This document shows positions 35,441 through 59,376 of a stretch of DNA of 64,000 nucleotides, piece by piece (position 1 is the stretch's first letter; each line of letters starts with the position of its first letter). The stretch comes from Guillardia theta CCMP2712 (taxonomy: Eukaryota; Protista; Cryptophyta): assembly GCF_000315625.1 (NCBI RefSeq), contig NW_005434630.1, positions 124,001-188,000 of the forward strand. The letters are read 5' to 3'. Both the position numbers and the translations under genes were made by a program. The notes beneath the pieces were generated by a model. The model saw only the letters and a list, made by a program, of their open reading frames with translations. It made no database searches and was not told the origin of the DNA.

Positions 35441-37136
35441 TCACGATGGCAACCACACTACAAGGATAGAGATATCATCATGCACCTGCAAAATACATGA
35501 AGATTTCAGTACTAGAGCTTGTTGGAGAAGCAACCCCTCCAGGGACAGCACACCTGCCTCCTCTTTGAACCTGGTTCGAGGTCCATCACATAATCTACTC
35601 CGTAACTGTGTGACCGCATTAAAATATGGCAGCACACTTGATTCAGCGGTACCGTTTCGAAACAGGGTTTGCACTCAGAGCTCCCCACAATAGTTTACAT
35701 GCTGCGTTCCTTGATTCATTCTCCATCTGAACCATTGTAAGAATCTAAAAGCAAGCAGGTGTACTTGCAAGCTTCAATAACCTGCTGAATCAACTGGTGA
35801 TTATGACCAGAAAAAAAATCGTGTTCACCACTGTAGAAACAGTTAAAGGAGCTAGATGATGTTTTCATCTTGTAGGGTTGATACCTTGCAGAGACCTCTG
35901 CTGGACTATAAGACGTTTTCTTGCTTTGGGCAAGGATACACCTGAAATAAGAAAAACTTTTAGAACAAAGATAATCAACAAGCAATGCAACATCACTTGT
36001 CTAGGATCTTCGCGCATTCGTCATTGGTCAACTCATCCCAGAGACCGTCAGATGCTGTGAATGAAAGCATTAGGAAGTGGCTGATCAAAGCAAAACTGGG
36101 AAAAAGCATTGATCGAAAAATCTTACCCAAAACAAGCATCTTTTCTTTCTTCGTGATTGGAATTTCAAAAAAATCTGGCGAAACAGAAACGTATGGAGGA
36201 GACTTCAACTCTCCACCAACGTACGGGCGTACGTGGTCAGGGAGCGCTTTGTTAAATTCGTAATCCTGTTTCAAATCCGATGAGAAATACACGACTTGGT
36301 AAAACACATGCACCTTCAAGAATAAATCTCCAATGGCCCTGGATACCTGCTCGATGAGTCAGGAGTGTTGCACAGCACTCATCTTTAACAAACTATCACA
36401 CCTGCAGAGTGCCCTTCACATACCAAGAGCCCGACTTTTGTACGAATTGCACAGCATCCACCTCGTCAGGATGCTCACGCAAGATCTTTTCACGTTCGAT
36501 AGCGTTCGATGCATTGTGCTCTCTGGTGACTTGGATAGCAGTATGCTTCCCATCCTCACCCTCGCTGATTAGGATCGCCCTACAGTCGCCGAGATTTCCA
36601 ACTACAACCTTTTCTCTCGTCACGTGTGCAACAAGTGCACAGGAACCCTCAAGAGATGCTGACCAATCGCCCCTTCGAATCAAAATTCTTGAATGATCTA
36701 TCCAACCATTCTCAAAGAGCTGAAACAGTCTTCGCACTATGCTCTGTGACGCCGTAAGCCCTTCAGAAGCTTGTGCTAAGAGCGATGGGGTGTTGGCTCG
36801 ACAGAATTCAGAGGCCCGAGGCCCGTAATGACCATCAAACACTCCATACACCACTCCTTCGCCATTCTTTACAATCACCATCCGATCTTCAGACTCCTGA
36901 TTTGCCCCGATGCATGCCCAATCAGCCCGAACAGAGTTCACTTGCTCAGTGCCCCACTCAGGAACCTTTCCTGTTGCGCCCAGTAAGGAAGACCTCTGTC
37001 CGCCCTTTCCACCAGGGTCTCGCAGGTTGTTGCAAAGAGCGAAGGTGGTAAAGCCCGTTGTTGTAGCGGCTATAACGACGGCTCTCTTTGAGAGAGTTCT
37101 GGCGGCTGATGGCATAGTTCTTTTCCAGAACCACAT
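35441..37136 (-). CDS. PP2C/PPM protein phosphatase (PDP / plant clade-D-like), probable mitochondrial presequence
   Basis: SEDRMVI; YGVFDGHYG; GSCALVA; VGNLGDCRAIL; TREHNA; VKGTLQ|VSRAIGD; PPYVSVSPD; ASDGLWD; HDDISILVV. N-terminus is Arg/Ala/Thr-rich. Confidence 0.92.
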
Positions 37137-40871: not shown

Positions 40872-43800
40872 ATGGTGCAGCCCGCACAGTTAAAGTTCAG
40901 ACCTTTGCTGCCTGTTTGCTGCTACCGGCCGACAGTTCGTGTGAAGCAGCGGGGCCCCGAGATGGCGCGAGAGGAGCCATGGTTCCGAGGGAGCATGGGG
41001 CGTCGCAGGAACAGAAACCTTTCCCTCATGCTCTTTGGTGTCACCCTGGTGAGCATGTTAGATATCAGAAAGAATTCGAGGAGCAAAGGAGTACTTGCAC
41101 AAACATGCAACGTGAGCGAAATTTGTCAGTGTTTTGGACATGGACAATGCAAATGTTCCATGGATCCAGTTGCAAGTACTCGATGTCAATGCGATCTCGG
41201 TTGGGATCCAAAGACAAATTGTTCAACTCTCCTTCCTTGCAAATCCACAAAAGGTACTGTGCCTGATCTGGATTCGTCCATTGATACATGTCCGCAGACT
41301 GCAATGGACATGGGATTTGTTTAAGCAACGGAAAATGCGAGTGTGATGTTGGATTTGCGGATGTATTTTGCGATAAAATTTTATGTAAGAAAATTCCACT
41401 TGACCTATTGATTTCTCATGTGAATTTGAACAGGTCCCAGGAATTGCAGCGGAAATGGATTTTGCGATCTCCTTTCTGGGCTGTGTTCCTGTGATTTGGG
41501 GTGGGAAGGATCTTCTTGTTCAAGCAAGACTTGTATTTGGAATTGCACCAATGGACAGTGTGTTGATGGGCAATGTGAATGTGATACCGGGTAAGTGCCT
41601 TCCACATTGACTTCTTTCCTCATTGTTTGAGATAGATATTCGGGAGTGGACTGTAGTATTTTTTCTTGTCCGAGCAAATGTTCAGGTCATGGAATCTGTG
41701 ATGTTGGATTCAAGAGATGTCAATGCACTGCATGGTAATCTTGCTTCAGATTGATGTGTTTCTTGACTAGTCTCAGGTACACGGGTCCTGATTGTTCGAT
41801 AGCTCTTTGTCCTTTCGACTGCTGGGGTCATGGTGTATGTCTAGACGGAAAATGTATTTGCGATCAATCATGGACTGGTTTTGATTGCTCACTGCCAAAC
41901 TGTCCTAATGGCTGTTCTGGAAGAGGAATTTGTCAGGTGACAACATATCACTTGTGCTGCAAAATTGTGAAGTGCTTCGTAGGGCAATGGAATATGTCAG
42001 TGTCAGCAGGGATTCTTTGGACCGTCTTGTGATCAAAGGTCTTGCTTAGTGCCTGACTGTAGTGGACATGGATTTTGCATGAACGGGACGTGTGTATGTG
42101 ATCCTAGTTGGATCGGCATCGGCTGCGAAAGCAAGGTAATTTGACTTTCATTGCTTTTTGTGCTTGATGTTGTTGACCATGGTTCAACAGATTGGAAATC
42201 TGAGCTGTCCGAGCCATTGCAGCGGTCATGGAGTGTGTCAACAAGGCCTTTGTATCTGTGACATAGGCTGGAGTGGGGAGGACTGTTCTAATGCTGTTCA
42301 ATGTCCAGCCAATTGCATGAACCATGGAGCTTGTATCAACGGGACTTGCGCGTGCACTTTGGGATGGACAGGCATCGATTGTTCTGTGCCGAGCATCAAC
42401 TCATCCTTAATCTGTGACTGCAAGAGTGCCTGGAATGATCCTCTCTGCAATTGTACAACTCCCACAATGGTCACGAATTCCAAAAGTATTCCGTCGTCGA
42501 CATGTCCGTCAAATTGTAGCGGACATGGTCTTTGTAGTCAAGGGAAATGCGTGTGTGACCCTGGTTTCTCTGGGCAAAGCTGTCAATATTTGACCGCTAC
42601 GTCATCTTCAGTTCAGTGTGTGAACAATTGCTCAGGACATGGTACTTGTTCACCATTTGGATGTGTTTGTGACAGTACGTGGTTCTTTGTAGATTGTTCA
42701 ATGCAAGTCGTACCGCAGTCGATTTGTAAATGGAATTGCTCCGGGCGGGGAATCTGTTCAAATGGAATTTGCCAGTGTGATCCGGGATATCACGGGGTCG
42801 GCTGCGAATCCGCATATTCCATCTCTTGGGTATCAAATTGTATCAACAATTGTTCATCGCATGGTGTTTGCACGAATGGAACATGTTTATGTGATCAAGG
42901 ATACATGGGCGATGACTGTCATTCCATAATTCAAACATGGCATCCACTTAGAATCTCAAATAATACGATATCACGTATACCCCTCATCCCTTCGTGCGAA
43001 TTTTTCGGGTGCTCAGGACATGGAAGTTGTGCCAACGGTGTTTGCGTATGTGATCCCTACTACTATGGTTGGCGTTGCGAAAATTTCATAACAATGCCAT
43101 GCCCTAATGATTGCTCTCTGCATGGAAATTGTATGAATGGAACATGTATTTGTGATTTGCACTGGGGTGGAAAGGATTGTTCAATTTTCGAATCATGTGA
43201 TCCTTTTTCTTCAACGCCGCCTTGTTCAGGCCGGGGAAATTGCCTCAATGGTACTTGCACTTGTAATGAAGGCTGGAGAGGTTATGATTGCTCAATCCCA
43301 ACTTGTGCTAAAGGATGCTCGGGTCATGGTTTTTGTGCAAACAGTACCTGCATTTGTGATTATGGTTGGGCTGGAGTCGAATGTAGCGAGCTTCAATGCA
43401 TAAATGATTGCTCCGGACATGGCGTTTGTGTGCTTCAAGAAAAGCCAACCTGTGCCTGTGTGGAAGGATGGGCAGGAGCAGACTGCTCTTTCAAACAATG
43501 TCCTACCAGCGCAGCCTTTCTAGTGCCATATGAACCATGTTCTGGTCATGGAGCATGTTTGCAGAATGGAACTTGTGAATGTTACACAAACTATCGCGGA
43601 CTAGATTGCGCGATCTTGTACGACTGCTCTGGAGCCGGCAAGAGGGTTTGTGGGAAATGTATCTGTGATGAAGGATTCAAGGGCATTGATTGTTCGATTG
43701 ATATGTGCAAAGACAGCAGAATAATGAATCCATTGTTTCCTGGGATCTACTCCAAGTCGACAGTATGCTCTGGTAATGGCACATGCACCACCAGCAAGGG

Positions 43801-46800
43801 CTGTGTCTGCAATTTCGGTGCTGGAGTGAACTGTTCATCTCCAGCATTCTGTCCGTCAAGGTGCAGCGGACATGGGAGATGTGTGGGTTTGAACGGGTTG
43901 GCAAATGATAAAGGAAGTTGTATATGCGACAACTACACCATCCAGGATAGTCCGTTCCCCACTCCGATGTACATTGGAACATTTTGTGAAACATTGGTGT
44001 GTCCCGGTTATGATGTCAACACACAAACGCAGTGCTCAGGGCATGGCATCTGTCAGAGTAATTACAGATGCTTTTGCTCTTCGTATGGACCCAATCAGCA
44101 AAGCACCTATGAGGGAGCAGACTGCGGTCTATTGCAGTTCGGGGCATTCAGTGTGGACTCAATCAGCCCAGCGGTGGGACCACTGCAAGGAGATACTATA
44201 GTAACGATGAGGGGTGTTGGGCTAGATCGCATCATCAACTCGTATGGTGGTCGGGTGTATTGTGACTTTGCAGTCGGTACGTTAACGATTGCAGAGTATG
44301 GCGATTACCGTGACATGATACTCTGCCCAAGTCCTCCAACTCTTTCTCAGCAGACAATCGTTATCAAGCTTCTCAATTCGCAAAGAGCTATCATCACCAA
44401 ATTTACCAACAACTTTCAGTTTGAGTATTACCCAGAACCTTCAATCCTTCAGCTAATCCCCTCATTTCTTCCTTTGCGCCCTTTAATTGCAAACCAAACG
44501 TACACTACGGCGAACTTTGCAAATGTCATCACAGTTGTTGGCTCGTACTTTCCAAGGGATGGGATTTATCAAGTTAAATTTGAAGATTGCACTTCACAGC
44601 CTGGAACTTACTTGAGCGAGACTTCAATTCAGATCTACGTTCCCCAGCTGCCCACAGGTGGAAAATATTTCCTGCAGGTTACAGCCAATGGACAACAATA
44701 TACCACTCCCTCTGAATCATTTCCAAAGCTTACAGTCTATGAAATCACAAAAATTTTCCCTCCATGTGTCGCATCGCAAGGAACGGATGTCGTTACCGTG
44801 ATAGGTAAATATCTGGTCGATCCGTCAGACTCTACTAGGGTCAACGCAAATCCCTACTGCCGATTTGGTACAGTCACCTTTCAAGGGCAGACCATAGCAT
44901 ATGGAGCCTCAAAAACAGATCCAGACTTTAGGTATTTCGCGTTTCACTCTCCGGCGTATGAAAGTACCACGTTACCTGGTGCGCTCGAATGCAACGCTCC
45001 TGATGCACCTGTCATGGACAATTCCTTCGCCCTCTCGTTGAATGCTGATAAATTTACTCCTTACGAATTTACTCCTCGCCAGCTTGATCCCTTCTATCTG
45101 GGTCAATACGATTACACGCCTTCTATTCAAGTTCAAACCTTCTACTTGCCCGTACTGAACATGTCACAGGGACCGATCACTCCTTCCATCGGACCTATCA
45201 ATGGTGGAACTATCATCACGGTTGTAGGCAATGGCTTCAATTACAGCAAATACAACCCACTGACAGGTGCAACAATACAAAGCAAGCAAATATTTGATTA
45301 TAAGCCCTACTGCAATCCTTTCCCGGTACCGCAATGTTCGTTTGGGTCTATGAGAACTTCAAGCTTAACCATCATCTCCGACACCAAACTGACTTGTGTA
45401 TCGCCGAAGATGACGGACTTCCTCACAACACCTCGACCTTATTCTTTCAGCATAGGCCTGGATGGTCAATCGTTCACTACTGCAAACATTCACTTTCAAT
45501 ATTTTCCAAACTTACAGATCCACAGAGTTTCTCCTTCAAGTGGCCCGGTGAATGGTGGAACTCGGCTCACGGTTTTTGGGAGCGGGTTTGTGAATCCAGG
45601 AAGCTTTCAAAACATCTGGTACCTTTATTGTGTGTTCACGACGAGCAGCTTTCCGAGGATCAGGTATCAAACCATAGCAAGTTATACCAACACGAGCGTT
45701 GTGCAATGCTTGTCGCCTTTGAATCTTGGCTCTCCTGTGAATTTAAAAGTAGATGTCTCTCTTAATGGAGAGTTTCGTGATGATCAACTCTCTGGCAGCT
45801 CAGTAACCTTTGCGGTTTATTTCAACCCCTTCATCCGTCTCCTGCAAAATTCGTTTAGCTCTGTAAAAGGAAACGAAGTCATCACGATTTTAGGGAATAA
45901 CTTTCTGAACTATGATACTCTTTCCTGTCGATTTGGCTCTGATTCAAACATCGTTCGTGCAAAGTTTGTCACGAGCAGTCAAATTTCCTGCCTGACTCCG
46001 ATACAAAACAATCCCCTTACAGTTCCATTTCAAGTTTCCTTGAACCAGAAAGATTTCAGCAGCAATGTCGTTCCATTCTATTTCTTTGCATTTGGATCAA
46101 TCACACCTTCAGACGCTTACCTTCGAGAGGAGACTCGATTGAACCTGACATTGAAATTTGATTCAAGCAATGAGACTAAGAGGGATTTGATCGAAAAAAC
46201 AGGGTCTGACTATTTTAATTTCCTGCTGAAATTTGACTCAAATATGTATGCCTTAAGCGCTGTAAGCTCTAGTTTCGATCCATCAAGCTCATCACTGATT
46301 GCAAACTTCGATGTTTCGATGGGTGAATGGTGCTCAAAATACATATCCACTTGTACTCCACAGAGCTTCTCAGTTTTATTTTCAATTACCCCGATTCCAG
46401 CGTTCGCCAATTCAAATGTCTTCAATTTTACTCTCACAGTCTTTTCCCTTGTTCTTCAAGGTGTGATTCCTCCAAACTTCACCAAGTCAAATGTGATTTT
46501 CTTGAAAGATGGTCGTTCGTATCCGATCACTTTCATTTACGGAGCTTCATACTTTTCTTCAAACCTTACATGTTATTTTCTGCCTTGCAATCGAACTTGT
46601 CCTGAGAATATTTCGAGCAACAGCATTTCATTTCTCAACAAGGCTGCAGCAAGAGTGAATGTGTCCACCTCACAAATCAGTTGTATTGCACCCAGTGTGA
46701 ATTCAAGTAGCTCGATCAATTCTTACTTATCTACAGTTGGCAACGCTCATACATTGTCAAATCAAACGTTTCGTATTGATTACATTTCTCCTCCCAAGAT

Positions 46801-49800
46801 TAACTTCACAACAATTGCAATCTTTTCCACTAGGACCAAAGTTTCCTTCCGATTGGAATGGTTTGACACCACACACGTTGATCTGAACAGACTCTCTTGC
46901 GTGTTCTTTTCCATCTCATCGCAGGCATTGAAATTCACCCGTGCGACATTCTACGCTGACAATAACATGATAGACTGTGATCTCCCGAACCTCCCTGGAC
47001 CTCAAAACTGGGATCCAATTTATGGCGTTGACAAGTACATTCTAGCGATCAGTCTGAATGAACGCGATCCTTGCATCGATTGCTCCAAGTTGAACACCAA
47101 ACAAGCTGTCATCAGCAATGCTAACTCTGGCACTAATAAGTTTGGGTTTAACTCCCAGACGAACAGTTACTGCGGATCGAACCCAGCGGATTTCAATACA
47201 GCTTTCTGCATTGAATCTCAAAATGGTGACTTTGCGCATTTGTACGTGGTTCAGGAGCCAACAAAGATCTACATATCACCTCCTGCACTGCTTCTAAGCG
47301 ATCAAGGATCGTCGAATGCCATTGTATTTCTCTCAGGACCAAATCTGCAATATCTGAATTGGAGGAATTGGCCGTCGTCATGGCCTTGGAATCCAAAGGA
47401 GAATTGCACAAGCTTTCCCAAACTTGGGAGAGATGTTGCTTGCAAGGTCATTTATTCCGGTACAACCAAGACAGTGCAAGGCTACTTTGACTTCTGCACA
47501 CAAAAGCTTGCTATCAACATTTCTGCAGTTTTGAAGGATATATCATCATCTCAGACATCGTCAAGTGTTTCTGTTATTTTTCAGCTGAATTTGCTTGATA
47601 GTACAGATTACTATCAAGTAGGTACAAATTTGGTAGTTTACACGAATTCCATTTGTCTACAACTTGATGGTATTGAGTGCGGCTACGGAACGTGTGTCAA
47701 GAGTCAGAACAACAATCAGTGTAAATGCTACAACAACACTTTCAAGACTGCAGCTTGGGATCTTGGATGTTTCGTCAGCCCGACCATCGACAGCATATCT
47801 CCTGCTCTGGCACCAGCGTCAGTGAGAGCGCGTGTCACGCAAGTTGTGTTGAACATGACTCTGTGGCAAACCACTTACTTCTCAACGACTTCAAACCCAT
47901 GGAATGTGTACGAGAACTGGCCGTTTGTATGCATATTTGGAAATGCGTCCAAGACTACTTCAGTGCAGTTGCTTCCTGTGGACAATGCGAAATCGATTCA
48001 CCGAAGTTTCTCTTGTCCGGTCCCCTCATACGATTTCTCTCCGGGAATCATAAATTTCTCTGTAGCTCCAATATACAACGACTCTATCTCATATCCATCT
48101 ATCTCATATCCATTTGGTACTTTCGAGTTTGAGTTCTATCGGCAACCTACCATTTTGTTTGCAACCATTTCCCGCAACGCTTCACTCTGGTATAATTTGA
48201 CCTTTCCTACCTGTTCTTCTCCTGTGTTACAACAGTGTGACTCAACTGTGTTTGTTGTCCAAGTTTTCGGCTACAATTTCTCCGATTTTCCTCCAGCTAC
48301 TTGTAAATTTGAAAGTTCATCGGGATCAAGTTCTCAGAGTGTGAAATTGGAATACATCTCAAGCTCGCTGATAAATTGCCCTCTACCATCTCTGTCATTC
48401 CCGGGACAATACGCCCTGTCTGTGTCAATGAACGGTCAAGAGTACATTGAGAAATCTTTTGACGTTCACTTCTATGAGCAGCCGTCAGTTTTCATCAATG
48501 ATACAACAAACTTGGGAGGTCTGATAGTCAATCAAGAGAATTCCATCAATCAGCTAAAGCAAGTTTATGGCACCGATGCTTCGTTTATTTCTTCTATTTC
48601 TTTCAATTCGAGGGTGACGGGAGCTCCCATACATGGGGGCACACCTTTGATTCTTTACCTTTCGACACAGTGCTCTCATTGCCAAGAGAACCTTCTTCAG
48701 TTCAGGAATGACTTGAGCATCAGGTTTGTTCCGTGCCCTTCGAGCACCAGCGATTGTTCATGCTTCTCCCCGAACGCTTACGAGGCTTTGAACCTCAGCC
48801 TGGGAATGTTCTCTCAGAATTATGCTGAATTGCAGATGTTCTCTCCAAGCATCAGAAGCTCCGACAGTGGAAACTTTCGTGTTTGTTTCGCTCTTGATGG
48901 CATACACTTCCTCCCGTTACAAACTTGCTCAATCTTGTCGCCAGATTGTGCTCGACGATATTTTGATTTTCAGTTCTATCCTCCTCCGATCATCACCAGG
49001 GTTGCAAGCCACTATTACCCTATAGATCTACCAGACAATCGTCAAGTTCAAGTAAAACTGTTTGGATCGCATTTCTTTCAACACTATCTGAGCTATCAGA
49101 GCCTGGTTTTGATTCTCGGCAATCAAGAAAGTGTATTAGCTCAAATCGATCAATCACTCATCATATTCAATCAAAATGGCGACGAGCTTCAGTTTCCCCT
49201 CCCACCACTGAATCTGAACTCGAATCTGAGAGTGAACATCACCATCTCCCTTAACGGCCATGACTATTTAGCGTTGAATTCTCGGTTGAGTGAAATCTTC
49301 ATTTACAAGTATCCATTACTCGATCACATCACGCCAAGACTCGGTCCTAACAACTTCGCGACAAACATTACAATTTATGGAAGCTACTTCAGCAAACTAC
49401 CACAAATGATGTGTAAACTCTCTTCTTTATGTCCCGACGACTCTTGTTCATGTTCAAATCAAGACTTCTACAGGTACGTGAACGCATTTTTTATCTCCGA
49501 CAAGAGCGTCGTCTGTCCGCAGAAAGAAGTGATCAATTCCACAAGCGGAAAGATCATCAATTCCACCTGTATCGCTTTTACACCTGATGCGAGCGATAAC
49601 TTTCAACTGATGTATCCTTCAGTTGCCCCATACTTGCTTCAGTCTCCAAAGGAATCCAAGTTTCGGATGATTAATCCAACTCTACCCCTGAATATTTCCA
49701 GCCGGGCTCTGACTTTACAAGCATCAAATTTCACTCTTGCGATGAGAAAATCTTTCCCCACATTGTCGGAAGCGAAGAGCAATTGTTACAACTTATCAGA

Positions 49801-52800
49801 CTTGTATCCTGAGAAAGAGTTTGCAATCTCATTGGTTCCCAGCTTACCGCAGTACATGTTACCATTCGATCCAACTTCAATACAATTTGCATGGAGTGTG
49901 AAATCTGATTTGTATTCTGAAGTTTCGTCATCAAGTTGTGTCAATTATATTGAAGTATACAACATCTCTGTGAGCTTTTGCATGAAAGTTGACATTCAAT
50001 TCAGCTTCAATGGAGGTCAATCCTACGACAGTCAGCTCCTGGAGGTTCTTTTCTTCAACAGCGTGCAGCCAAACCAAATCTACACCCTTCCGCTCAGAGC
50101 AAGCTTAAACAATTTACCAAGGCCTGACGTGGATTTTAAGATCTTGATCAATTTGCTTTCAAGCATCACACAAACCTTGAGCGCACCTGTGATATTGTCA
50201 ATGTTCTCCCGAGCCGTTGGTTGTGACACGTCCATGATCTATTTCTGTGAGCCTGGACAGAAACTCTGCCAGGGGGAAGGTTGCTGTGATCCGTCGAAGA
50301 TCTACGTCTGCCCCATTGGTCCCTCGTGTGTGTTTGCTTATGAAGCCTACGGCACAAGCGCTGTGGTCTCCGGTAGCTTCTTGATAAAGAAGGACTATCA
50401 CGTGAGCTGCCAAGCACCCATCGTTCCCAATGACAGATATGCAAATGTAAGTATCTTAATTCATGGCTCCTGGGTAGTCAAGAACCTTGGACCATTCCAC
50501 TTCTTCAAACAGCCGCAAGTTTACAACGCTTACCCATCAGCTGTCAGCTTCGACATGCCTACAAATCTTGCTGTCAATGGTTCTTTCTTCATAAAGAACA
50601 ATAATCAGCAATGGCAAATTTTTTGTGTCTTTGACTTCAACAACAACACTCCAGCCACCAACAACTGGCTGGTCCCCCGGAAGTTCTCTAAGGCAACGTT
50701 TCTGAACTCAACAGCACTCACTTGTGACTCTCCGCCTATCACCGGTGGGAGGACCACAAACCCGATATACCCGGTAGCTCGAGTCGGCGTGATCATGGAC
50801 GGTATTTGTAATCCATCAATTGATAACTGTCAGACCATTCGTAATTTGGATCAGGCGCTGTGGACCAATGCTTTTATCATTTACATTCCTACACCTGAAA
50901 TCTACCAGATCATGCCAACAAATGCCTTCCCAGTCAGTCCTCTGGACAGAATATTGCAAATTACAATATATGGAGCGAACTTCTATCGATATTACACCAT
51001 CGGAACTCTCACAGACCAACCGTACAGCCAAATACGAGCAACATTTCAGAGATTGGAAAACACTTCCTTTTACAACTCAACAGTCAAATTCGGATGGACG
51101 TGTAGATTTGGCGACATTGTCCAAAACATTTCAAGCCTGATTCCAACATCTTCTTGCGGACTTGCAGGTGTAAATCCAGTCTCTTGTGGATACTTTGTTT
51201 GTTCGATCCCTTGGACTAATTACACTGAGACAACCCCAGTTCAATTCTCTGTGTCTTTCAATGATGTCTCAGGACAATATTCTCAAAGTACAATTTTCAT
51301 ATATGCTGCTCCAAACATTGAAAAACTGACACCATCGTACGGGGATTTGAAAGGAGGGTACCAGATAACAGTGGAAGGAAGTCAATTCTTGAACGTACCT
51401 TCTCTCAGGTGTAAGTTCTCGCTCTGCGTCTTTCGAGATGGCCAATGTGTTCCAACACGAGTCGACACATTCCCTCCAGTCATACTTGACGGCTTCTATT
51501 TGAACCACACGAAAGTTCAATGTCCTACTCCCGGAGGATTCTTTTGGAACTTGACGCTAAACCCTGAACAATGCAATTTTCCAAGTGCCGACCGCTGCTA
51601 TGGTCTGTTGAATGTGCAGATAAGCAACAATGCTCTGGAATACTCGAACATAACCCGCCAGTCCGTCTTCCTGTACAACACCAATGTCGCCTTCAACGGC
51701 TTCTTCCCGATAAGCGGACCACGCAGCGGAGGAACAAACATCACTGTATCTGGATCCAACTTTGACACCGTAAAGAACATTTCATGCAAGTTTGGATCTC
51801 AAACCTCAGTCAAGGCGTTGATCTTGACCGCTTCTACCATCGTTTGTCGCACACCAAACTTCACTTCTGCCATTCCATATGGCGGTGTCACCTTAGGGTT
51901 CTCCACGAACTTGATTTCATTCTGTTTTCTGTTCCCATTGACTGGATCAAACACACTGGTGTGCAATTTCACAACCTCTCTTTCAAAATCTGTCAAGTTC
52001 TATTATCATGACGATTACAAGATCTCCTCTATATTCCCTGTTGCAGGAGACTTTTCGGGAAACACAGTGGTCAATCTTACTGGAATCGGTTTCACCAATT
52101 ACAGTCAGCCGATATATTGTATTTTTGCAGTAGTGCACGTCCCTGCTGTGATTGACAGTTCTACCCGCGTACGTTGTTTGTCTCCAGCTCTGCCTCCTAA
52201 CCCGCGAGACTGCTCGCCATGTCCCTACTTCCTCGACAAGGGATACCCTCTGTACCTGTCGAGTAATTTATACGACAAGAGCGCTGGGATCAATTTCTCT
52301 TGGATTGCTACTCCAGAGATCTCAAGTTTAAGTCCACTCACAAGGAGCTACTATTTGACTCTGCCTGCAACCATGTATTCGCCGCTGAAGACGATGATTG
52401 GGGTTAGCAACAGTCTACCCCAAGGGAGTGTGAATGGAGGAACAATAATTACCGTGGTCGGAGTGAATTTCACAAGCTTGAGTAGACCAGACTTGTTCGA
52501 TCCAACCGATCCTCAGCTTCGATGTGACTTTCCTTTCAAAATACCGAGATCTACCATAGTAGAATATTCTTACAATTGTACAACAAAGAATTCCGTGAAA
52601 ACATCTAATGGGGTTCCTCAACCGTATTGTGTTGCGACTGATGGGAAAGAATACCAATGTAGATTCACCAATTCCTCGTGGTACAATGTAGCAGGTCAGA
52701 AGGTCACAGATTTGAAGTGCAGATTTGGTGAGAGCTCAACAAGAGCAACTGTCTTGGACACCAGTACAATCTTATGTGCTGCTCCGCCCCATCCCACCGG

Positions 52801-55800
52801 AACCATTGTACCACTCACGGTGACGATGAATGACATCGAATACTCCCAATTGAAACCAAACACCTACTTTCAGTACGTCAGTCAGCAACCACAAGTCGTG
52901 CAGTCATCTTTGACTAATGATGGCTCTCAGATCATAGTGCGCTTCAGTGAATCAACTAATTTGTTTGCAGACCCTTCGTTGTATCAGAAGGAATTCCCAT
53001 GCTCTCGGATCTTTGAAGCAATCACTGCAAACTCATTCGGAACTTCAAGCTCGTGTACTTGGGATGCTCTCAATCAGACGATCACTGTTCTGATTGGATC
53101 TAACTCAAACTTTCAATTGAATGATAATCTCGTGTTTTTGTCGACCTTGCAGAATCTAATGATCAATCCTTTTCCTACAGCAACTTGTCAATATTTCACC
53201 GTGTCAACAGCTTGTAGGACAAGAGAAAGCGTCAGCCTTCAAGCGAATGCAAGGCCTTGGTGTGGAAGTTGCCTGCCGCTCATCACGATCTTGACGCTGT
53301 CCATGACTCCAATACCGTTTGTTCAAGTCTCTGACCTTCTCAACCTCTCCGACAGCTCCTCTGGCGCTGTTATCGGGAGACCTTCCAACCCTCTCAACCC
53401 GACTCCTGTAATCAATGGGCCGAACATGATCAACGGCTGCTCCAAGTACTGTATCGGCGGGGTGAATGATGGCATTCAATGTTCCACGTCGTCAGACTGT
53501 CTTGACGCAGAGTGCAAAGCAATCCTAGCGAAGCTAGATGGAACAGCGTCGACCGGAGCAATCAAACGAAATTTCCCTGTAATACAATGGAGTCTAATTA
53601 GCAGTCATGTAAATCTTTCGGATTCAACCATGAAGTCAGATGTAAGCATGAACTTAAAGTCTTTGAATGGGAATCTGACAGTTTACATAACTCAAGACCT
53701 TCTTCCATATCAAAATATAGCTTCTGCGCAATTCTGTTTCTCTTTGTATCTAGAAAATTGGATTGGAGGAAAGGGGGGGACCGCAACTTGTAAAGCTGTT
53801 CAGTTCATCAATCAATCAATACCAACATTTAGTATCAACAGGCCTTCATCGAACTCTCGCTTAATCTCGGAGGGCTTTTCGATTTCCATCACCGGGTCCT
53901 TTGGATCGTGCGGAGTGCCTGTTTCTCTCAGCAATGTGAACTATGCCTGGAGCATCTCCCCCACCGATCTTATTGGCTTGGACTCCATACCCAAGACTGA
54001 TTCTGAGTTGGTGATCCCTCCGTTCTCTGCTGATCCAAGTAAGGATCAGAACAGTCTCACGTACACCATAACTGTTTCTATCAATGTACATGTGCAAAAG
54101 ATCATTACATTGCAATTTTCGGTTCAAGTTGAATTCAAAAAGTCTCCCCCACTTGCGATTCTCCTTGGAGGCAACAAGTCGATAGGTAATGGAGAGACCC
54201 TCGTTTTGAATGGTTCAACTTCCTACGATCCAGATCTTGCAGGGAACAACACACACTTGGTCTACTGCTGGAGCTCTTCACCTGCTGGAGGAGGTCTTGT
54301 CATCCCTGAAAACAACATCAGTGTCTGGATGGTGGAAGCGCTGCAAGCCTCCACAACTTACACCTTCACACTGACAGTCTATCGACCGCAGCCCGAGCCC
54401 TTCAACTGTTCAGAAGCAGCGTCTAGAGGATACGTGTCGTCCTCAGCATCAGCCAGCGTTTCAGTCATAGGATTGTCAAACGTCCCCCTTGTGCAAATCC
54501 AACCGCTCTCAAGTTACGTCTTGAACGTGAAGCAATACAACAGAATCTCTGCTCTTCTTCAGCAGCAAAGTTGCCAGATGAGTTCCCCGTCCAGTTGCAT
54601 TCTGCAATACTCATGGAGCGTGACGCCATTTGTGCCCATGACCTTCACTCTCACGAGGGGTTATGGTATTGTGTCGTTGACCTTCACTCCCGATACCTTC
54701 TCAACAGTCTCTTCTGCAACATACACCATTAGCATCAGCACAGTGTACGAGTTTCAACCCATCACTTCGACTATACAAATTACCACTAACGTGGGACCTT
54801 ACGGAGGAAAATTCGCCGTCCTTCCATCGAAAGGGGTTGCTTTTGCAACCTCTTTCTCACTCAAGGCTAGCCAGTGGAATGCTGAATACCTGCCACTTCA
54901 ATACTCGTTTTCTTATTCATGTTACAGTGCAGGGCTTTCACTCACTGTCGACCTCTCGGGATTTCAAGATTTGAACAGCTATTCGACTGACCTGCCGACG
55001 ACGAGCTTGCAGTCTGATTACAGCATGATGATATTGTTGCAGATACGAGATTCAATGGGAGCAATCGCACAAACTTCTTCCATTGCCATTGTGCAAAAGC
55101 CTTCTTCACTCGAGAATCTTGTCATCAACTTTCAGAGGAACATGACAGACAGGCTCTTGTTCAAGGATGTATACGGGGCCTCGCTGCAGCTTGCCAACTA
55201 CGGCATGCTTGTGGATCCCTTGTGCTCTAGCTCGAACTCGATGTGCGAGACTCTGATCGGAGCGTTGGCGCAATCGGCCTTCTCATTGATGGGTTACTCG
55301 TCGACCACCAGCGCTCGTAGGCTGCTGAGCATTCAGGAGACTCAAGCTCTCAACAGTCTAGACACAGCTCTAAACTCCTTGTCATTCCTGTCAGTAGCAG
55401 GCCCATCGAATCTGAATGCCAGCATCTGCGAAACTTCGATATCAATTCTGAAGACAATGCTAGAGAATCAACTGACTATTGGCGACACTTACGAAGCAAA
55501 GAGATCTCGGGCACAAAGACTTCTTCCGATGGTTGCGAACTGTCAAGAATATCTGAAGTCTGGAACGTTCTTTGATGACATGCTCTCAGTACTGAAATAC
55601 GTTGGTATCTTGGTAATGAAAGGTACAGTGGCAGGAGATTCACAGGCGTTCGATATCAACAATAAGACCGACACTTATCGACTGAGCGTCATGTACGGAC
55701 GTTACAGTACGACCATGATTGAAAGTCAGGTTGTGAACCTTACCTCTGGAACTCAACAGCTGCTTTCCTTCACTCTGCCTCCATTGAAAGATAGTGCTGT

Positions 55801-57541
55801 TTTCAAAACCAGCTCATTTGACTTGCAAACGGTACTCCTTGGCACAACCATTCCATATGGTGACGCTAATCTATACACTCGATTGCTGGAGTTCATAGCC
55901 TTGGATACCCTAGCGAGCACAGACACTACTCTACCTGGCCAAGTGGCGAATGTCACTCTTGATAACTTCACGGGCACTGTCTCAATGAAGCTATCGAACA
56001 TGTACACGCTGTGCACGAATAGTCAAGGTTGCAATCGGGATCCAAGCAATGGGGTGTCTTCGGGCATCGTGTGCGGTTACTACAATGAGAGCTTTCAACG
56101 GTGGATACAATACGGAGTGAATTATCAAGTGTATCCAGGAACGATCTCATGTCTGGGGAACAACTCACTGCATAGGTTTTACTCGCTGATCGCTGGGACT
56201 GTAGGTTGTGACTTGGTTGCTTCCGTGACTCCGAAGCCGTTGAACCCATGCTTATCCTGCAGTACCCTGCAGATCCCAAGGCAAGGAATCTGCGATTGGA
56301 TAGGGAGGGTGTGCTTTGGAACACTGGACAAATGTTACGTTTGCAATGGGCGCAACCGATCCTTCACCTCTTCTGTCTTCACCAACGAATCGGGTGTTTG
56401 CGATTACCTCGGACGAGTGTGTGCGGATGGTGAGGTGGTTTCAGTTTGCGGGTTGTGCGGGCCCCCCAGCCAGGCGAAGAGCGCAGTCTCTGACGTGGGG
56501 GTGTGCGACCATTGCGGGGTGCCCGAAGGAAAGAACAGCACCATGGACCAGTGCGGCGTCAACCCCTCCATCCCTACCCCCTACGTCTGCCACCCCAAGG
56601 GTATCACTGCCGCAGGGTCGGCGTGGAATGCAGCATGTACGGGATGTGACGGGGTCGTGCGGCCTGACTTGCCCTGGAACCCCCAGACGGGTGGAGGAGT
56701 GCAGTTGGACGTCTGTGGCGTCTGTGGGGGCAACGGCTCTACCTGTGCGGGTTGCGATGGCATTCCAAACTCGGGCAAGGTGTATGATATCTGCGGGATC
56801 TGCGGAGGAACCAACAGCCTCTGTAAGGGCTGCAACGGGAAGGCCTCGCGAGATCCGACCCAGTTCGACAACTGTCGGATCTGTGGTGGAAATTTCTTCG
56901 GAGCCTGCAAGTTTGACACCAGCCCGATTCAAAGGTGCGACACAAAGACCTTCCTTCCCAGGTCGGTCTGCCAGCAGGGCTGCGATGGAGTTGAGAACTC
57001 CGGCAAGACTTACAACAAATGTGGGAAGTGTGGAGCCCCTGACAGCGAGTGCTTGTTGTGCAACAGCACCGACACAAAGACAGGGTCCTGCCTTTCGATC
57101 TACACGTGGACCAATGTCACCAAATGCTACTTCGGCACGTATGTGGACAAGTGCGGGCGGTGTGGAGGAAACAGCACAGACTGTCAGGGGTGCGATGGCA
57201 TTCCTTTCTCGGGAAAAGTTCCAGACATCTGTGGAGTTTGCGATGGGCCGGGAACGAGCTGCATGGGCTGCGATGGAGTCCCGAACTCAGGCAAGGTGCT
57301 GGACTCCTGCGGCGTCTGCAACGGAAACAATGACAAGGACGCTTGCGGGGTGTGCTTGACCAAACTGGTGGGCCCGCCCAACGAAAGTTGCATGGGGTGC
57401 GATGGAAGTTTGTACAGCGGCAGGGCCGTGGACGCGTGTGGGGAGTGCGGAGGATCGAATCTCTGCATGTGGAGAGATGGGCAACTGCCAGCGAATGACC
57501 CCAGCGGACTTGCAGTGAACGTGACGGTCTTTGTAAACTAG
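40872..57541 (+). CDS. Giant secreted glycoprotein (~5,500 aa): tenascin-type EGF repeats, IPT/TIG repeats, REJ module, degenerate GPS/GAIN, C-terminal GCDG..DxCGVCGG repeats
   Basis: Several small EGF exons at 41100-42135, then one exon ~42192-57541. CSGHGxC..GxCxCD..WxGxDC repeats run to ~44130. SISPxxGPxxGGTxITVxG IPT repeats span 44150-52880. REJ-like motifs LDGTAS, LVLNGSTSYDPD and PYGGKFAVLPSKG..TSFSLKASQW lie at ~53400-55100. CGYYNESFQRW..ISC at ~56070-56190. Cys repeats 56200-57480. No C-terminal TM. Confidence 0.9.
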
Positions 57542-57797
57542 TGGGATGAAGGGCATGTAGAGGTAAATCAGATGGTGTTGAAGCCAAGTCTGCCTCCCTT
57601 TCCGTCTTCTTATCTGTCTGTCTGCCTATCGGTCTGTCTGTCTGTCTGTGTTGCTGACTGCTGTAATTACAATCAAAGCGTCTCACGCGTGCTACGCATA
57701 AGGGCTAGTCGTCAATAAATTTGCTAAGTTTAAGGGTGAACTTGTCGGAGAAGTGATAAATGCGATTGAAACGCATCCTCTCCTAGAGCCGTGAGAC

Positions 57798-59191
57798 TCA
57801 TCGGGTGAAGCCTCGAGCTCTGCCTACAGATTCGATTGCTGTCACCAAAGACGAGTAGGGCACCGATCCTGGTCTGCTTGCTGACTCGAAGCCGAAGAAA
57901 AGCTCATCAATCTGCCCACGCAAGTCATTTCATCTCAACTTCTTCGACTGACCTACTTGCTCCTCGTCCGCCGCAACTCCATACAGAGACAGAAATCTCT
58001 GAAAATCTTGTATGTTCATACGTCCTGACTGGTCAGTATCGAAAGAGGCTAAAGCCTGTGCGTAACTCCTGACTCCATGTTCATCAAGCTTGTCAGCTAT
58101 AAGGCAGAGCAGTCTGCGTTCGTCATCATCTCCTCAACTTCATACGATGTGATGAGACCTGTCTCTCAAGTCTGAGAACGCCTGGCCAACAAGCGGATCA
58201 TAGGTTTGATTGTTGTGCATCCGACGGCTGGGGTGAAGGAAGTCAGGGAGAAGCTTCGAGTCTCTCATGGTCTGGTTGATGGTGCGCTCAGAGGCTCCGC
58301 GAAACCTCGACCGGTCGATGCTGAAAGGTGTACATCGCTCCATGTGACGGGTGACTCTCTCTGCCACCCCTGCGCTCCTTCACCCCTCCATCCCCAAGCA
58401 CGGCCAACCCTCACCGTCCTCGTCCTTCGGGGGAGGCCATGGAAAGTCTCTGTAGCTGGGAAACGCCCCGAGCTGCTCCTTCCTCCATGGCACTGCGACC
58501 ATCGAGAATGAAAGAAGCCAAAGCACAACGATGGCCTACCCGAGCGGTTCTGAAAGTTTCCCTTCCAAAAGTTCTTGACAGGTTTTATGGGTTTGACCTG
58601 CTCAGGACTTCAGTCAAACTCCAACCTCACTCGTCGCTGCCTTGTCAGTCGCTCGCAGCTGTTTTGACCAGAATTTGCTCCACCACGCAAACTGCATTTC
58701 CTCCAAGTCTTCGACTGCCTCGACAACAACGCTGTTTGATCGGAGGCTGTCTATCTTTTCATCTGGCAAACGTCACAGTCATGGAGGGTTCTTTCTCTCT
58801 GCTACCTTGATCGACTGTCTGCGTCTCATCCTCTTCTATCACCTGATGCGTGTGAGGTTCAAAACATAGTTTGCGCCATGACACCTTGTCAACACCGAAG
58901 GGAGGGTTCAAGCGAGAGACTCTGGCAGCAAGCGCAGGACTCTCTCTTCCCACAGACTTCGCCTGTTGCAAACTCCTGCTGTCATGTTTCCCTGTCTATC
59001 TCGACACATCAGAAAGTAACACACTCAGAAACATTCTCTGCTCACATTGTGAGTCGCGGAACTCGACGAGAGAGTTTGCTGCGATTCAAGTGAGTCAGGC
59101 AGGGCAACAAGAGTCAAAGACATACTTCAATGTGCTTCTGAGCTGTCAGAGGGTTGCGAGACTGATTCCCCGCCCTCTTCCTTCTCTCCAT
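57798..59191 (-). CDS. Multi-exon protein with C-terminal EF-hand pair
   Basis: Exon SYAQALASFDTDQSGRMNIQDFQRFLSLYGVAADEEQ (~57957-58070) joins IDELFFGFES..VPYSSLVTAIE..FTR*. ATG at 59191. Confidence 0.65.
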
Positions 59192-59376
59192 CCCTCCTCA
59201 ACTCATGGCCCGATCGGAGCAGTAGGGCCTGCTGGTTGTCTCGCCTATGCCACCTGTGACTTCACTTGCTGTCCTGATATTTTGACTAATATCAGGCTGA
59301 GGTGAGCCTGGTGTGCGACAAACTGGTCAACCTACAAACTTCACGAAGATTTACATTTATCTTGCTTTATATCAAC

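What the first reader, a model, noticed from the sequence alone, without database searches (positions are those of the whole stretch)
40872..57541. Giant membrane-anchor-less polycystin-1-like mosaic: EGF array + IPT array + REJ + degenerate GPS + Cys-repeat tail
Seen: about 5,500 aa with a long run of tenascin-like EGF repeats, multiple IPT/TIG repeats, a REJ-like module and a GPS-like segment (VCGYYNESFQRW..ISCLGNNSLHRF) lacking the H-L-T/S autoproteolysis motif. Where TM helices would normally follow, there is a tandem GCDGxPNSGKxxDxCGVCGG array and then the stop codon. Known: REJ plus GAIN normally precede the TM region of PKD1-family receptors. Inference: a secreted, non-self-cleaving structural filament or surface-coat protein (for example flagellar hair, scale or periplast component), or a soluble partner of a polycystin-like channel. 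An RRLL motif (~55315) could be a subtilase processing site.
Basis: partly seen in the sequence, partly recalled or inferred. Interest (0 to 1): 0.75.

Follow-up and report, generated by a model that had tools for sequence, protein, structure and literature searches.

The report
Anchor-less giant REJ-GAIN secreted protein
This alga gene encodes a roughly 5,400-residue secreted surface or matrix protein that reuses the outer part of the kidney-disease protein polycystin-1, with its self-cutting site disabled and no membrane anchor; the same layout is kept in other cryptophyte algae, but its job is untested.

Summary
Window 40872-57541 (+) is one expressed gene, with a 15.3-kb last exon and six inferred short 5' introns. 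It lies in an 87-Mb protist genome, Guillardia theta according to earlier notes.

Domain order:
- signal-peptide-like start
- about 25 tenascin/teneurin-type EGF repeats
- at least 18 IPT/TIG domains
- REJ (110 bits)
- a GAIN fold (Z 16.3 to BAI3) whose cleavage tripeptide reads Ser-Leu-His, where seven paralogues have His-Leu-Thr/Ser
- about 12 four-cysteine modules like the GCDG...CGVCGG piece of ADAMTS cysteine-rich domains
- then the stop codon

A transcript contig from the same organism runs unspliced through the stop. A convergent gene begins about 257 nt downstream. The Hanusia and Teleaulax transcript proteins end at the same position. Baffinella-like relatives and in-genome paralogues carry a C-terminal hydrophobic tail, so the anchor-less state is specific to part of the family.

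The most likely function is a secreted, uncleaved extracellular scaffold, coat or adhesion protein. Its location (periplast, flagellar hair, channel partner) is untested.

This scan has already reported other REJ-GAIN giants on other DNA of this genome, including an anchor-less one that ends in LysM domains.

The parts
40872..41253 (+). Exon 1. Candidate ATGs at 40872, 40962 and 40995. Signal-peptide-like MGRRRNRN-LSLMLFGVTLVSML (hydrophobic core 41019-41060), then the first EGF-like cysteine pattern.
   Evidence: Start and signal peptide are inferred; no transcript was found for the 5' end.
41298..42135 (+). Exons 2-6 (41298-41384, 41434-41590, 41636-41734, 41777-41936, 41983-42135). They encode about 8 further EGF repeats and are separated by GT-AG introns of 42-49 nt.
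   Evidence: Inferred from frame continuity and EGF periodicity. Intron sizes match the transcript-verified 37-50 nt introns of the neighbouring gene.
42191..57541 (+). Exon 7, 15,351 nt, 5,116 codons plus the TAG stop. It is preceded by a 55-nt intron (42136-42190).
42191..44125 (+). Tenascin/teneurin-type EGF array in exon 7: 12 canonical six-Cys units plus degenerate ones.
   Evidence: EGF_TEN 264 bits, EGF_Teneurin 246 bits, EGF_Tenascin 128 bits
44168..52822 (+). IPT/TIG array. At least 18 copies are detectable, and there is room for about 30 Ig-like domains.
   Evidence: TIG up to 1.7e-24 per piece; self-profile, 18 hits
52823..53929 (+). Linker region between the last TIG and the REJ profile match. 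No family hit.
   Evidence: 30-32% identical to distant family members
53930..55141 (+). REJ domain.
   Evidence: 109.8 bits, model 12-429 of 452
55142..56200 (+). GAIN domain: helical subdomain A followed by beta-sandwich subdomain B.
   Evidence: pLDDT 72, pTM 0.77; top 10 PDB matches are all GAIN, E 8e-7 to 6e-4; Z 16.3-11.5 to GAIN domains; the next unrelated row scores 7.0
55316..55327 (+). RRLL. The Arg-Arg pair is conserved in the family (GGRRRR, GRRLL, ARRLL) and lies in a loop with pLDDT below 50 in GAIN subdomain A.
   Evidence: (R59 invariant)
56069..56203 (+). GPS-like segment VCGYYNESFQRW...ISCLGNNSLHRFYSLIAG. The tripeptide Ser-Leu-His at 56165-56173 replaces His-Leu-Thr/Ser.
   Evidence: no Pfam GPS hit
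56201..57466 (+). Cysteine-rich tail of about 12 four-Cys modules. Seven are canonical GCDGxPNSGKxxDxCGxCGG units like the ADAMTS cysteine-rich motif.
   Evidence: (ADAMTS5 chain 9rwm_A, E 7e-4); (50-54% identity to distant family members, nearly all Cys invariant)
57467..57541 (+). Last 24 residues (MWRDGQLPANDPSGLAVNVTVFVN) and the TAG stop. No hydrophobic tail.
   Evidence: orthologues end here
57542..57797 (+). 3' untranslated spacer. It includes a (TCTG)n-like low-complexity run at about 57586-57660 that reads as hydrophobic peptide in all three frames.
   Evidence: colinear and unspliced in transcript contig L035
57798..59219 (-). Convergent neighbouring gene (not part of the finding). 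It has nine spliced introns of 37-50 nt and a weak EF-hand match, and it bounds the 3' end of the giant gene.

Best explanation
This is a real, expressed gene for a secreted extracellular protein of about 5,400 residues. It is rich in cysteine (5.3%) and carries 100 N-x-S/T sequons.

What is shown: the domain order, the missing anchor and the replaced GPS residues. The domain order is a signal peptide, about 25 tenascin-type EGF repeats, at least 18 IPT/TIG domains, a REJ module, a GAIN domain with a dead cleavage site (Ser-Leu-His for His-Leu-Thr/Ser), and about 12 ADAMTS-cysteine-rich-like modules. It ends with no transmembrane helix and no GPI-type tail.

What is inferred: it enters the ER through the N-terminal signal and stays as one chain at the GPS, because both the base and the nucleophile are replaced. 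It is released outside the cell as a long multidomain rod. There it acts as a structural, coat or adhesion component. It would be held at the surface non-covalently, by self-assembly or by binding membrane-anchored relatives through its two best-conserved ends, the EGF array and the Cys tail.

It is the Guillardia orthologue of a family that is colinear end to end in several cryptophyte genera. Some members are anchor-less and others keep a C-terminal hydrophobic tail.
For: - Domains.
- GAIN fold.
- Dead GPS: seven paralogues keep C.C.HL(T/S).F. The whole orthologous group lacks His at P-2, and Guillardia and Hanusia also lack Ser/Thr at P+1. The catalytic tripeptide definition is from PMC13197933.
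- No anchor in the ORF: Kyte-Doolittle hydropathy scan.
- No anchor in the mRNA: transcript contig L035 is colinear with window 54256-57915, with one mismatch. It retains the TAG, while nine introns of the convergent neighbour have been removed from the same contig.
- No anchor in orthologues: the Hanusia phi transcript protein (72% identical) and the Teleaulax amphioxeia 'complete' ORF end at the homologous residue.
- Constraint: the protein is colinear with relatives over its full length. The EGF array is 49-53% identical and the Cys tail 52-53%, against 24-27% for REJ and GAIN.
- Extracellular nature: 100 sequons, disulfide-type modules and a signal-like N-terminus.
Against: - The N-terminal exons and the signal peptide are inferred only. 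No 5' transcript was found, and no SignalP or DeepTMHMM was available.
- An uncleaved signal anchor cannot be excluded. Its hydrophobic core is only 14 residues, which argues against it.
- Close relatives (the Baffinella-like P0007/P0054, the P0004 cluster, and Guillardia paralogues on C7, C24 and C35) do carry a C-terminal hydrophobic tail.
- The 3' UTR has a low-complexity run that could encode such a tail if a 56-nt intron were removed. The one transcript contig does not remove it.
- Location and binding partners are untested.
- The AF2 model of the tail was unusable.
Confidence: 0.72

Rival explanations
1. It is a soluble outer partner of a membrane protein. It would dock on one of the many PKD2-type channels or on single-pass REJ-GAIN paralogues, as a tether or hair. 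The precedent is Chlamydomonas mastigonemes, which are held on cilia by PKD2. This is a special case of the secreted reading, not a contradiction of it.
For: - The genome has at least 60 PKD_channel matches and at least 40 REJ loci.
- PKD2 anchors extracellular glycoprotein polymers in Chlamydomonas (PMC7265326).
- Tubular-hair proteins of stramenopiles carry tenascin-like EGF repeats (PMC5756292).
Against: - No channel gene lies in the window.
- There is no sequence link to MST1 or to stramenopile hair proteins; this was not tested.
- Nothing here bears on localisation.
Confidence: 0.15
2. It is membrane-tethered after all. This could be through an uncleaved N-terminal signal anchor, or through a minor mRNA isoform or stop-codon read-through that adds the hydrophobic stretch encoded at about 57589-57657.
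For: - Anchored relatives exist.
- A GT...AG interval at 57533-57588 would join ...NVTVF to SASLSVFLSVCLPIGLSVCLCC-stop. The in-frame read-through also gives a spacer followed by a hydrophobic run.
- The c-region after the signal core is long and charged.
Against: - The transcript contig keeps this interval unspliced.
- Three genera end at the same residue in transcript-derived proteins.
- The hydrophobic run comes from a (TCTG)n-like repeat that is hydrophobic in every frame, so chance explains it.
- The signal core has only 14 hydrophobic residues.
Confidence: 0.1
3. It is a decaying paralogue that lost its anchor through a premature stop and has no function of its own.
For: In-genome paralogues with the same REJ-GAIN-Cys-repeat order keep a hydrophobic tail and an intact HL-S site.
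Against: - The reading frame of 5,116 codons in exon 7 is intact.
- The gene is expressed.
- The same end is conserved in Hanusia and Teleaulax.
- The tail is 80% identical to Hanusia and 52% identical to distant members, with nearly every Cys invariant.
Confidence: 0.03

Closest known systems
Polycystin-1 / PKD1 family, including sea-urchin suREJ proteins and PKDREJ
   Same: The REJ module is followed directly by a GAIN domain. The GPS is of the two-cysteine C.Y(F/Y).E....W ... C....L..F type. The ectodomain is very large and mosaic. suREJ proteins also combine EGF with REJ (from my own knowledge).
   Different: - No transmembrane helix after the GPS, no PLAT domain and no 11-TM or channel-like region.
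- The cleavage tripeptide is dead.
- A 446-residue cysteine-rich array follows the GAIN domain.
GAIN domains of adhesion GPCRs (BAI3 4dlo, BAI2 8oek, latrophilin 4dlq, GPR126 6v55)
   Same: The fold matches over about 250-260 residues at Z 13-16. A helical subdomain A is followed by a beta-sandwich subdomain B, and the last strand is in place. Uncleaved GAIN domains are known (8oek is described as uncleaved).
   Different: - There is no 7TM.
- Arac et al. 2012 state that all GAIN domains they analysed immediately precede the first TM helix (PMC3321182). Here the last strand is followed after three residues by a Cys-rich array and then the stop.
Fibrocystin (PKHD1) and PKHD1L1
   Same: Giant extracellular proteins built mainly from a long IPT/TIG array (from my own knowledge).
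   Different: No G8 or PbH1 hits. REJ-GAIN and EGF arrays are present instead. There is no TM helix.
ADAMTS cysteine-rich domain (Pfam ADAMTS_CR_3, PF19236; ADAMTS5 chain 9rwm_A)
   Same: The unit GCDGxxxSxxxxDxCGVCGGxNSxC matches the C-terminal roughly 25-45 residues of that domain. The match to ADAMTS5 has E 7e-4. Relative P0002 shows 34 matched stretches to PF19236, the best at profile positions 90-115.
   Different: Only this sub-motif is shared. Here it is a free-standing tandem repeat, while ADAMTS proteins have one copy inside a larger domain. This protein itself scores only E 8.3 against PF19236.
Tenascin/teneurin EGF arrays; stramenopile tubular-hair (retroneme) proteins
   Same: Tandem short six-Cys EGF units of the C..CSGHG.C..G.C.C..G..G..C type, far above the Pfam cut-offs. 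Retroneme proteins are said to carry tenascin-like EGF domains (PMC5756292).
   Different: No fibronectin-III or fibrinogen domains, and no teneurin core. Any relation to hair proteins was not tested.
Other Guillardia REJ-GAIN giants noted by this scan (LysM-ended secreted form; ZU5/zinc-ribbon single-pass form)
   Same: Same genome-wide expansion of REJ-GAIN proteins. One reported form also lacks a membrane anchor.
   Different: Different loci and different C-terminal modules: a Cys-repeat array here, LysM or ZU5 there. I did not examine those loci.

Membership tests
Polycystin-1 (PKD1/PKD1L/PKDREJ) family | REJ domain | tested here: met
   PF02010, 109.8 bits, model 12-429 of 452
Polycystin-1 (PKD1/PKD1L/PKDREJ) family | GAIN domain with a GPS His-Leu-Thr/Ser cleavage site | tested here: not met
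   The GAIN fold is present, but the tripeptide is Ser-Leu-His and the Pfam GPS model gives no hit.
Polycystin-1 (PKD1/PKD1L/PKDREJ) family | Transmembrane region directly after the GPS (1 or 11 helices) | tested here: not met
   No hydrophobic segment of 1.7 or more in the ORF. The stop is retained in the transcript, and a convergent gene lies 257 nt downstream.
Polycystin-1 (PKD1/PKD1L/PKDREJ) family | PLAT domain and PKD-channel-like C-terminal half | tested here: not met
   No PF01477 or PF08016 match in the window.
GAIN-domain proteins (adhesion GPCR type) | GAIN fold: about 6 helices followed by a beta-sandwich ending in the GPS strands | tested here: met
   AF2 pLDDT 72, pTM 0.77. Z 16.3 to 4dlo_A with 263 residues aligned, and the top 12 matches are nearly all GAIN.
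GAIN-domain proteins (adhesion GPCR type) | GAIN domain immediately precedes the first TM helix (Arac 2012) | tested here: not met
   The GAIN domain is followed by a 446-residue Cys-rich array and a stop. The rule is quoted from PMC3321182.
Fibrocystin/PKHD1 family | IPT/TIG array plus G8 and PbH1 repeats plus a single TM | tested here: not met
   Only TIG is found. There are no G8 or PbH1 hits at E <= 0.01 and no TM.
ADAMTS cysteine-rich domain (PF19236) | Full 115-position domain above the Pfam cut-off | tested here: not met
   E 8.3, 6.9 bits, positions 70-115 only. The local match to ADAMTS5 has E 7e-4 over 43 residues.
Tenascin/teneurin-type EGF array | Tandem EGF_TEN / EGF_Teneurin / EGF_Tenascin units above cut-off | tested here: met
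   264, 246 and 128 bits against cut-offs of 65, 24 and 25.
Cryptophyte EGF-TIG-REJ-GAIN-Cys-tail family (unnamed) | Full-length colinearity with the Hanusia, Teleaulax and Baffinella-like proteins | tested here: met
GPI-anchored or tail-anchored surface protein | C-terminal hydrophobic stretch of about 15-20 residues | tested here: not met
   The protein ends ...PSGLAVNVTVFVN. Relatives P0004, P0007 and P0054 do have such a stretch. No GPI predictor was available.

The most novel reading that the evidence does not exclude
This cryptophyte-wide family may be the so far unidentified 'secreted high-molecular-mass polypeptide' that self-assembles into the surface periplast component (Perasso, Ludwig and Wetherbee 1997, known to me only from its title as cited in PMC12223506 and PMC6212826). 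In that case a polycystin-type REJ-GAIN module with a silenced cleavage site has been turned into a building block of a protist cell covering. Members that keep the hydrophobic tail would serve as membrane attachment points.
Probability: 0.12. Interest if true: 0.75.

Novelty: new variant of a known kind. Interest (0 to 1): 0.5.

Why it matters
The REJ-GAIN pair is studied almost entirely as the membrane-proximal switch of polycystin-1 and adhesion GPCRs. The founding structural paper states that every GAIN domain its authors analysed sits directly before a TM helix.

Here the GAIN domain is expressed and conserved across cryptophyte genera. It is catalytically silent, sits away from the membrane and belongs to a fully secreted protein. 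This suggests the fold can also serve a purely structural or binding role.

The gene also gives a concrete, testable candidate for the unknown giant glycoproteins of the cryptophyte cell covering or flagellar hairs. In addition, it shows the ADAMTS 'GCDG...CGVCGG' piece working as a free-standing tandem repeat in protists.

If the protein is just one more extracellular adhesion mosaic, the result is a corrected gene model and domain map for a hypothetical protein.

Tried and rejected
- **Downstream TM or GPI exon: rejected.** I found a possible 56-nt intron (57533-57588) that would add a hydrophobic tail. Transcript contig L035 keeps that stretch unspliced, although nine neighbouring introns are removed from the same contig.
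- **Pfam on the tail and the GAIN region at E up to 10:** this gave only a trace of ADAMTS_CR_3.
- **Pfam GPS, PLAT and PKD_channel:** none hits this gene.
- **ESM Atlas on the tail:** it returned only unnamed clusters at scores of 0.84-0.85, which is no lead.
- **AF2 of the tail:** mean pLDDT was 41.8, so the model was unusable and no fold search was run.
- **Transcript for the 5' exons:** two exact-pattern scans of metagenome contigs found nothing.
- **Kexin/furin-type convertase:** no P domain was found in the genome, so the RRLL cleavage idea stays weak.
- **Literature:** searches found no paper on REJ or GAIN proteins of cryptophytes.
- **Searches not run:** I did not run the large HMMER search, because no claim here rests on the absence of relatives.
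- **Spliced model:** I did not hand a joined spliced protein to any tool. Exons were read one by one. The only joins were short flanks inside a script, made to test frame continuity.


Full report
**What is there**

The window is G000:C44:124001-188000 of an 87.1-Mb, 669-contig genome. Earlier notes of this scan name it Guillardia theta.

On the + strand a single open frame runs 42158-57541, 5,127 codons with no stop. Upstream of it, EGF-like cysteine patterns continue in short islands in shifting frames back to an ATG-bearing ORF at 40872. Pairwise tests of GT-AG intervals give one sensible join for each pair of islands. Each join restores the EGF spacing. The introns are 41254-41297, 41385-41433, 41591-41635, 41735-41776, 41937-41982 and 42136-42190, 42-55 nt long.

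The CDS therefore has seven exons and 5,421-5,462 codons, depending on the ATG used. The 5' model is inferred. Two exact-pattern scans found no transcript for it. Exon peptides were read separately.

**Domain map**

- **Signal-like start.** Exon 1 encodes MGRRRNRN-LSLMLFGVTLVSML-DIRKNSRSKGVLA-QT. This looks like a signal peptide with a 14-residue hydrophobic core.
- **EGF array.** Pfam gives EGF_TEN 1.3e-78, EGF_Teneurin 2.1e-74, EGF_2 4e-54 and EGF_Tenascin 9e-38 in the first 513 residues of the big ORF. Exon 7 holds 12 canonical six-Cys units plus degenerate ones. With about 8 in exons 1-6, the total is about 25.
- **IPT/TIG array.** TIG is hit in six of the ten 513-residue pieces. A profile built from the protein's own copies finds 18 between ORF residues 671 and 3555, with gaps that could hold more diverged Ig-like domains.
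- **REJ.** It scores 109.8 bits over model positions 12-429 of 452, at window 53930-55141.
- **Not present.** There is no PLAT, PKD_channel or GPS profile match in this gene.
- **Composition.** The protein has 5.3% Cys, 11.9% Ser and 100 N-x-S/T sequons.

**The 'degenerate GPS' is the end of a true GAIN domain**

I aligned residues 4329-4690 with five relatives and predicted the structure. The model has mean pLDDT 72 and pTM 0.77, with a helical half followed by a beta-sandwich.

Foldseek's ten best PDB matches are all GAIN domains: BAI3, BAI2, latrophilin-1 and -3, GPR126, CELSR1, GPR110, GPR56 and CD97, with E from 8e-7 to 6e-4. The second-look aligner gives Z 16.3 to BAI3 (263 residues aligned, rmsd 4.9). 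GAIN domains score Z 15.1-11.5, and the first unrelated row scores 7.0.

In seven Guillardia paralogues the Pfam-positive GPS reads C.C.(F/N/R)HL(T/S).F. Here the aligned residues are ...SCLGNN-S-L-H-RFYSLI. So His(P-2) is Ser and the Thr/Ser nucleophile (P+1) is His. The defining tripeptide, His-Leu/Ile-Ser/Thr, is taken from PMC13197933.

All members of the orthologous group lack the His. The more distant ones keep a Ser at P+1. Autoproteolysis is therefore very unlikely in this protein. That is an inference from the replaced residues, not a test.

**The cysteine tail**

Three residues after the last GAIN strand the chain enters 446 residues with 54 Cys. These form seven canonical GCDGxPNSGKxxDxCGxCGG(x)nC units and about five looser ones.

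No Pfam family covers it. One unit aligns to the ADAMTS5 chain 9rwm_A ([25 protein letters not shown]) at E 7e-4. In a relative with about 80 such units, Pfam ADAMTS_CR_3 matches 34 stretches, the best at profile positions 90-115. The unit therefore looks like the C-terminal piece of the ADAMTS cysteine-rich domain, used as a free-standing tandem repeat.

Together with the EGF array, the tail is the best-conserved part of the protein. It is 52-53% identical to distant family members, against 24-27% for REJ and GAIN, and nearly every Cys is invariant. An AF2 model of the tail was unusable (pLDDT 42), and the ESM Atlas gave no lead.

**Is it really anchor-less?**

No 19-residue window in the ORF exceeds 1.66 on the Kyte-Doolittle hydropathy scale. 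Paralogues show clear helices of 2.0-3.0 after their GPS.

I took the rival seriously for two reasons. First, relatives with the same Cys tail end in a hydrophobic segment. These are the Guillardia paralogues on C7, C24 and C35 and family members P0004, P0007 and P0054. Second, a GT...AG interval at 57533-57588 would splice ...NVTVF onto SASLSVFLSVCLPIGLSVCLCC-stop.

The test came from protein P0024, a 1,094-residue exact fragment of this ORF carried on JGI record Ga0186123_100412. That 4,557-nt contig is a transcript:
- It is colinear and ungapped with window 54256-57915, with one mismatch.
- It then matches the genome in nine further blocks separated by gaps of 37-50 nt. I checked the first gap against the genome sequence. 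It begins CT and ends AC on the + strand, which marks an intron of a minus-strand gene.
- The TAG at 57539-57541 and the candidate intron are therefore present in mRNA, in a contig where real introns have been removed.
- A convergent gene (weak EF-hand match) has its 3' end about 257 nt after the stop.

The hydrophobic reading comes from a (TCTG)n-like run that gives Leu/Ser/Val/Cys in every frame, so chance explains it.

Independent support comes from two transcript-derived proteins. The Hanusia phi protein ends ...GLAVNVTVIVQ, where this one ends ...GLAVNVTVFVN. The Teleaulax amphioxeia ORF, labelled 'complete' and 6,056 aa long, ends ...DAVVMEVPLGPV at the homologous position.

The Baffinella-like proteins (P0007, P0054) and the P0004 cluster continue for about 40-70 more residues, into a hydrophobic stretch followed by a few terminal residues, some of them basic. 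The family therefore exists in anchored and anchor-less forms, and Guillardia has the anchor-less one. That the tail was lost rather than gained is suggested by the anchored paralogues. I did not test this with a rooted tree.

**Context**

The genome holds at least 40 REJ loci, eight Pfam-positive GPS sites that all lie next to a REJ domain, at least 60 PKD_channel matches and only seven PLAT matches. Most REJ paralogues have one strong TM helix after the GPS. A few have several. Six other loci combine REJ with the same Cys repeat. The one on C35 has an intact HL-S site followed directly by Cys repeats and a hydrophobic end.

Neighbours in the window are unrelated: a PP2C gene upstream and the EF-hand-like gene downstream. 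This scan has already reported other REJ-GAIN giants on other pieces of this genome. They include a secreted one ending in LysM domains and single-pass ones with ZU5 or zinc-ribbon ends. I did not examine those loci.

**How it probably works**

Shown: the domain order, the dead GPS residues, the lack of an anchor in the mRNA, expression, and conservation across genera.

Inferred: the protein is exported through the ER, stays as one chain, and acts outside the cell as a long modular rod. The two most constrained ends, the EGF array and the Cys tail, are the likely contact surfaces, either for self-assembly or for docking on membrane-bound relatives.

Three more specific ideas are open and untested:
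- **Surface periplast.** Perasso et al. [quoted passage not shown] I could read only the citation.
- **Flagellar hairs.** Tenascin-like EGF domains are reported in stramenopile hair proteins (PMC5756292).
- **Channel tether.** The protein could be held by a PKD2-type channel, as Chlamydomonas mastigonemes are (PMC7265326).

On the RRLL motif: the Arg-Arg pair is invariant or extended to RRRR(R) in the family, and it lies in a loop with pLDDT below 50 in GAIN subdomain A. This is compatible with a dibasic processing site. However, no kexin/furin P domain was found in the genome. Ordinary S8 subtilases are present.

**Comparison and novelty**

The protein shares only the REJ-GAIN module with polycystin-1 and suREJ proteins. 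It fails the family's other defining features: a TM region, a PLAT domain, a channel half and a cleavable GPS. It has a true GAIN fold, but it breaks the stated rule that GAIN domains immediately precede the first TM helix (PMC3321182).

I rate it a new variant of a known kind. The modules are known. What is new is the order of the modules and a secreted, non-cleaving REJ-GAIN protein, conserved in a cryptophyte family that I could not find described in the literature. Interest is moderate, because the function is unknown.

Noticed in passing
window 57798-59219 (-), and L035:3543-4529: A convergent neighbouring gene has nine transcript-verified introns of only 37-50 nt and a weak EF-hand match. 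Its 3' end comes so close to the giant gene's 3' UTR that both mRNAs were assembled into one transcript contig.
   Followed up: partly
window 57586-57660: A (TCTG)n-like low-complexity run in the 3' UTR reads as a hydrophobic Leu/Ser/Val/Cys peptide in all three frames. In the main frame it follows the stop after a spacer of about 23 codons. This mimics the spacer-plus-hydrophobic-tail layout of anchored relatives. It is most likely chance, but a decayed remnant or rare read-through is not excluded.
   Followed up: partly
G000:C35:588147-588608 (L032): This paralogue has an intact GPS (TCASRHL-SIFSV) followed directly by GCDG...CGVCGG repeats and a hydrophobic C-terminus. It is a potentially cleavable GAIN domain that is not next to the membrane.
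   Followed up: partly
whole genome G000: Large expansions: at least 40 REJ loci and at least 60 PKD_channel matches, but only 7 PLAT matches. Only one REJ-channel pair lies within about 7 kb (C40:521599 and C40:528755).
   Followed up: no
P0002 (Logan/ENA, 4,128 aa): A protein from an unidentified organism has a signal-like start, about 80 CGxCxG motifs with 34 ADAMTS_CR_3 matches, and one strong TM helix near the C-terminus. The repeat is therefore used on its own as a giant stalk elsewhere.
   Followed up: no
window 36396-37136 (-): An exon-sized ORF with a PP2C phosphatase match (1.1e-15) lies upstream of the giant gene.
   Followed up: no
whole genome G000: No proprotein-convertase P domain (PF01483) appeared in the six-frame search, although at least 15 loci match Peptidase_S8.
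   Followed up: no
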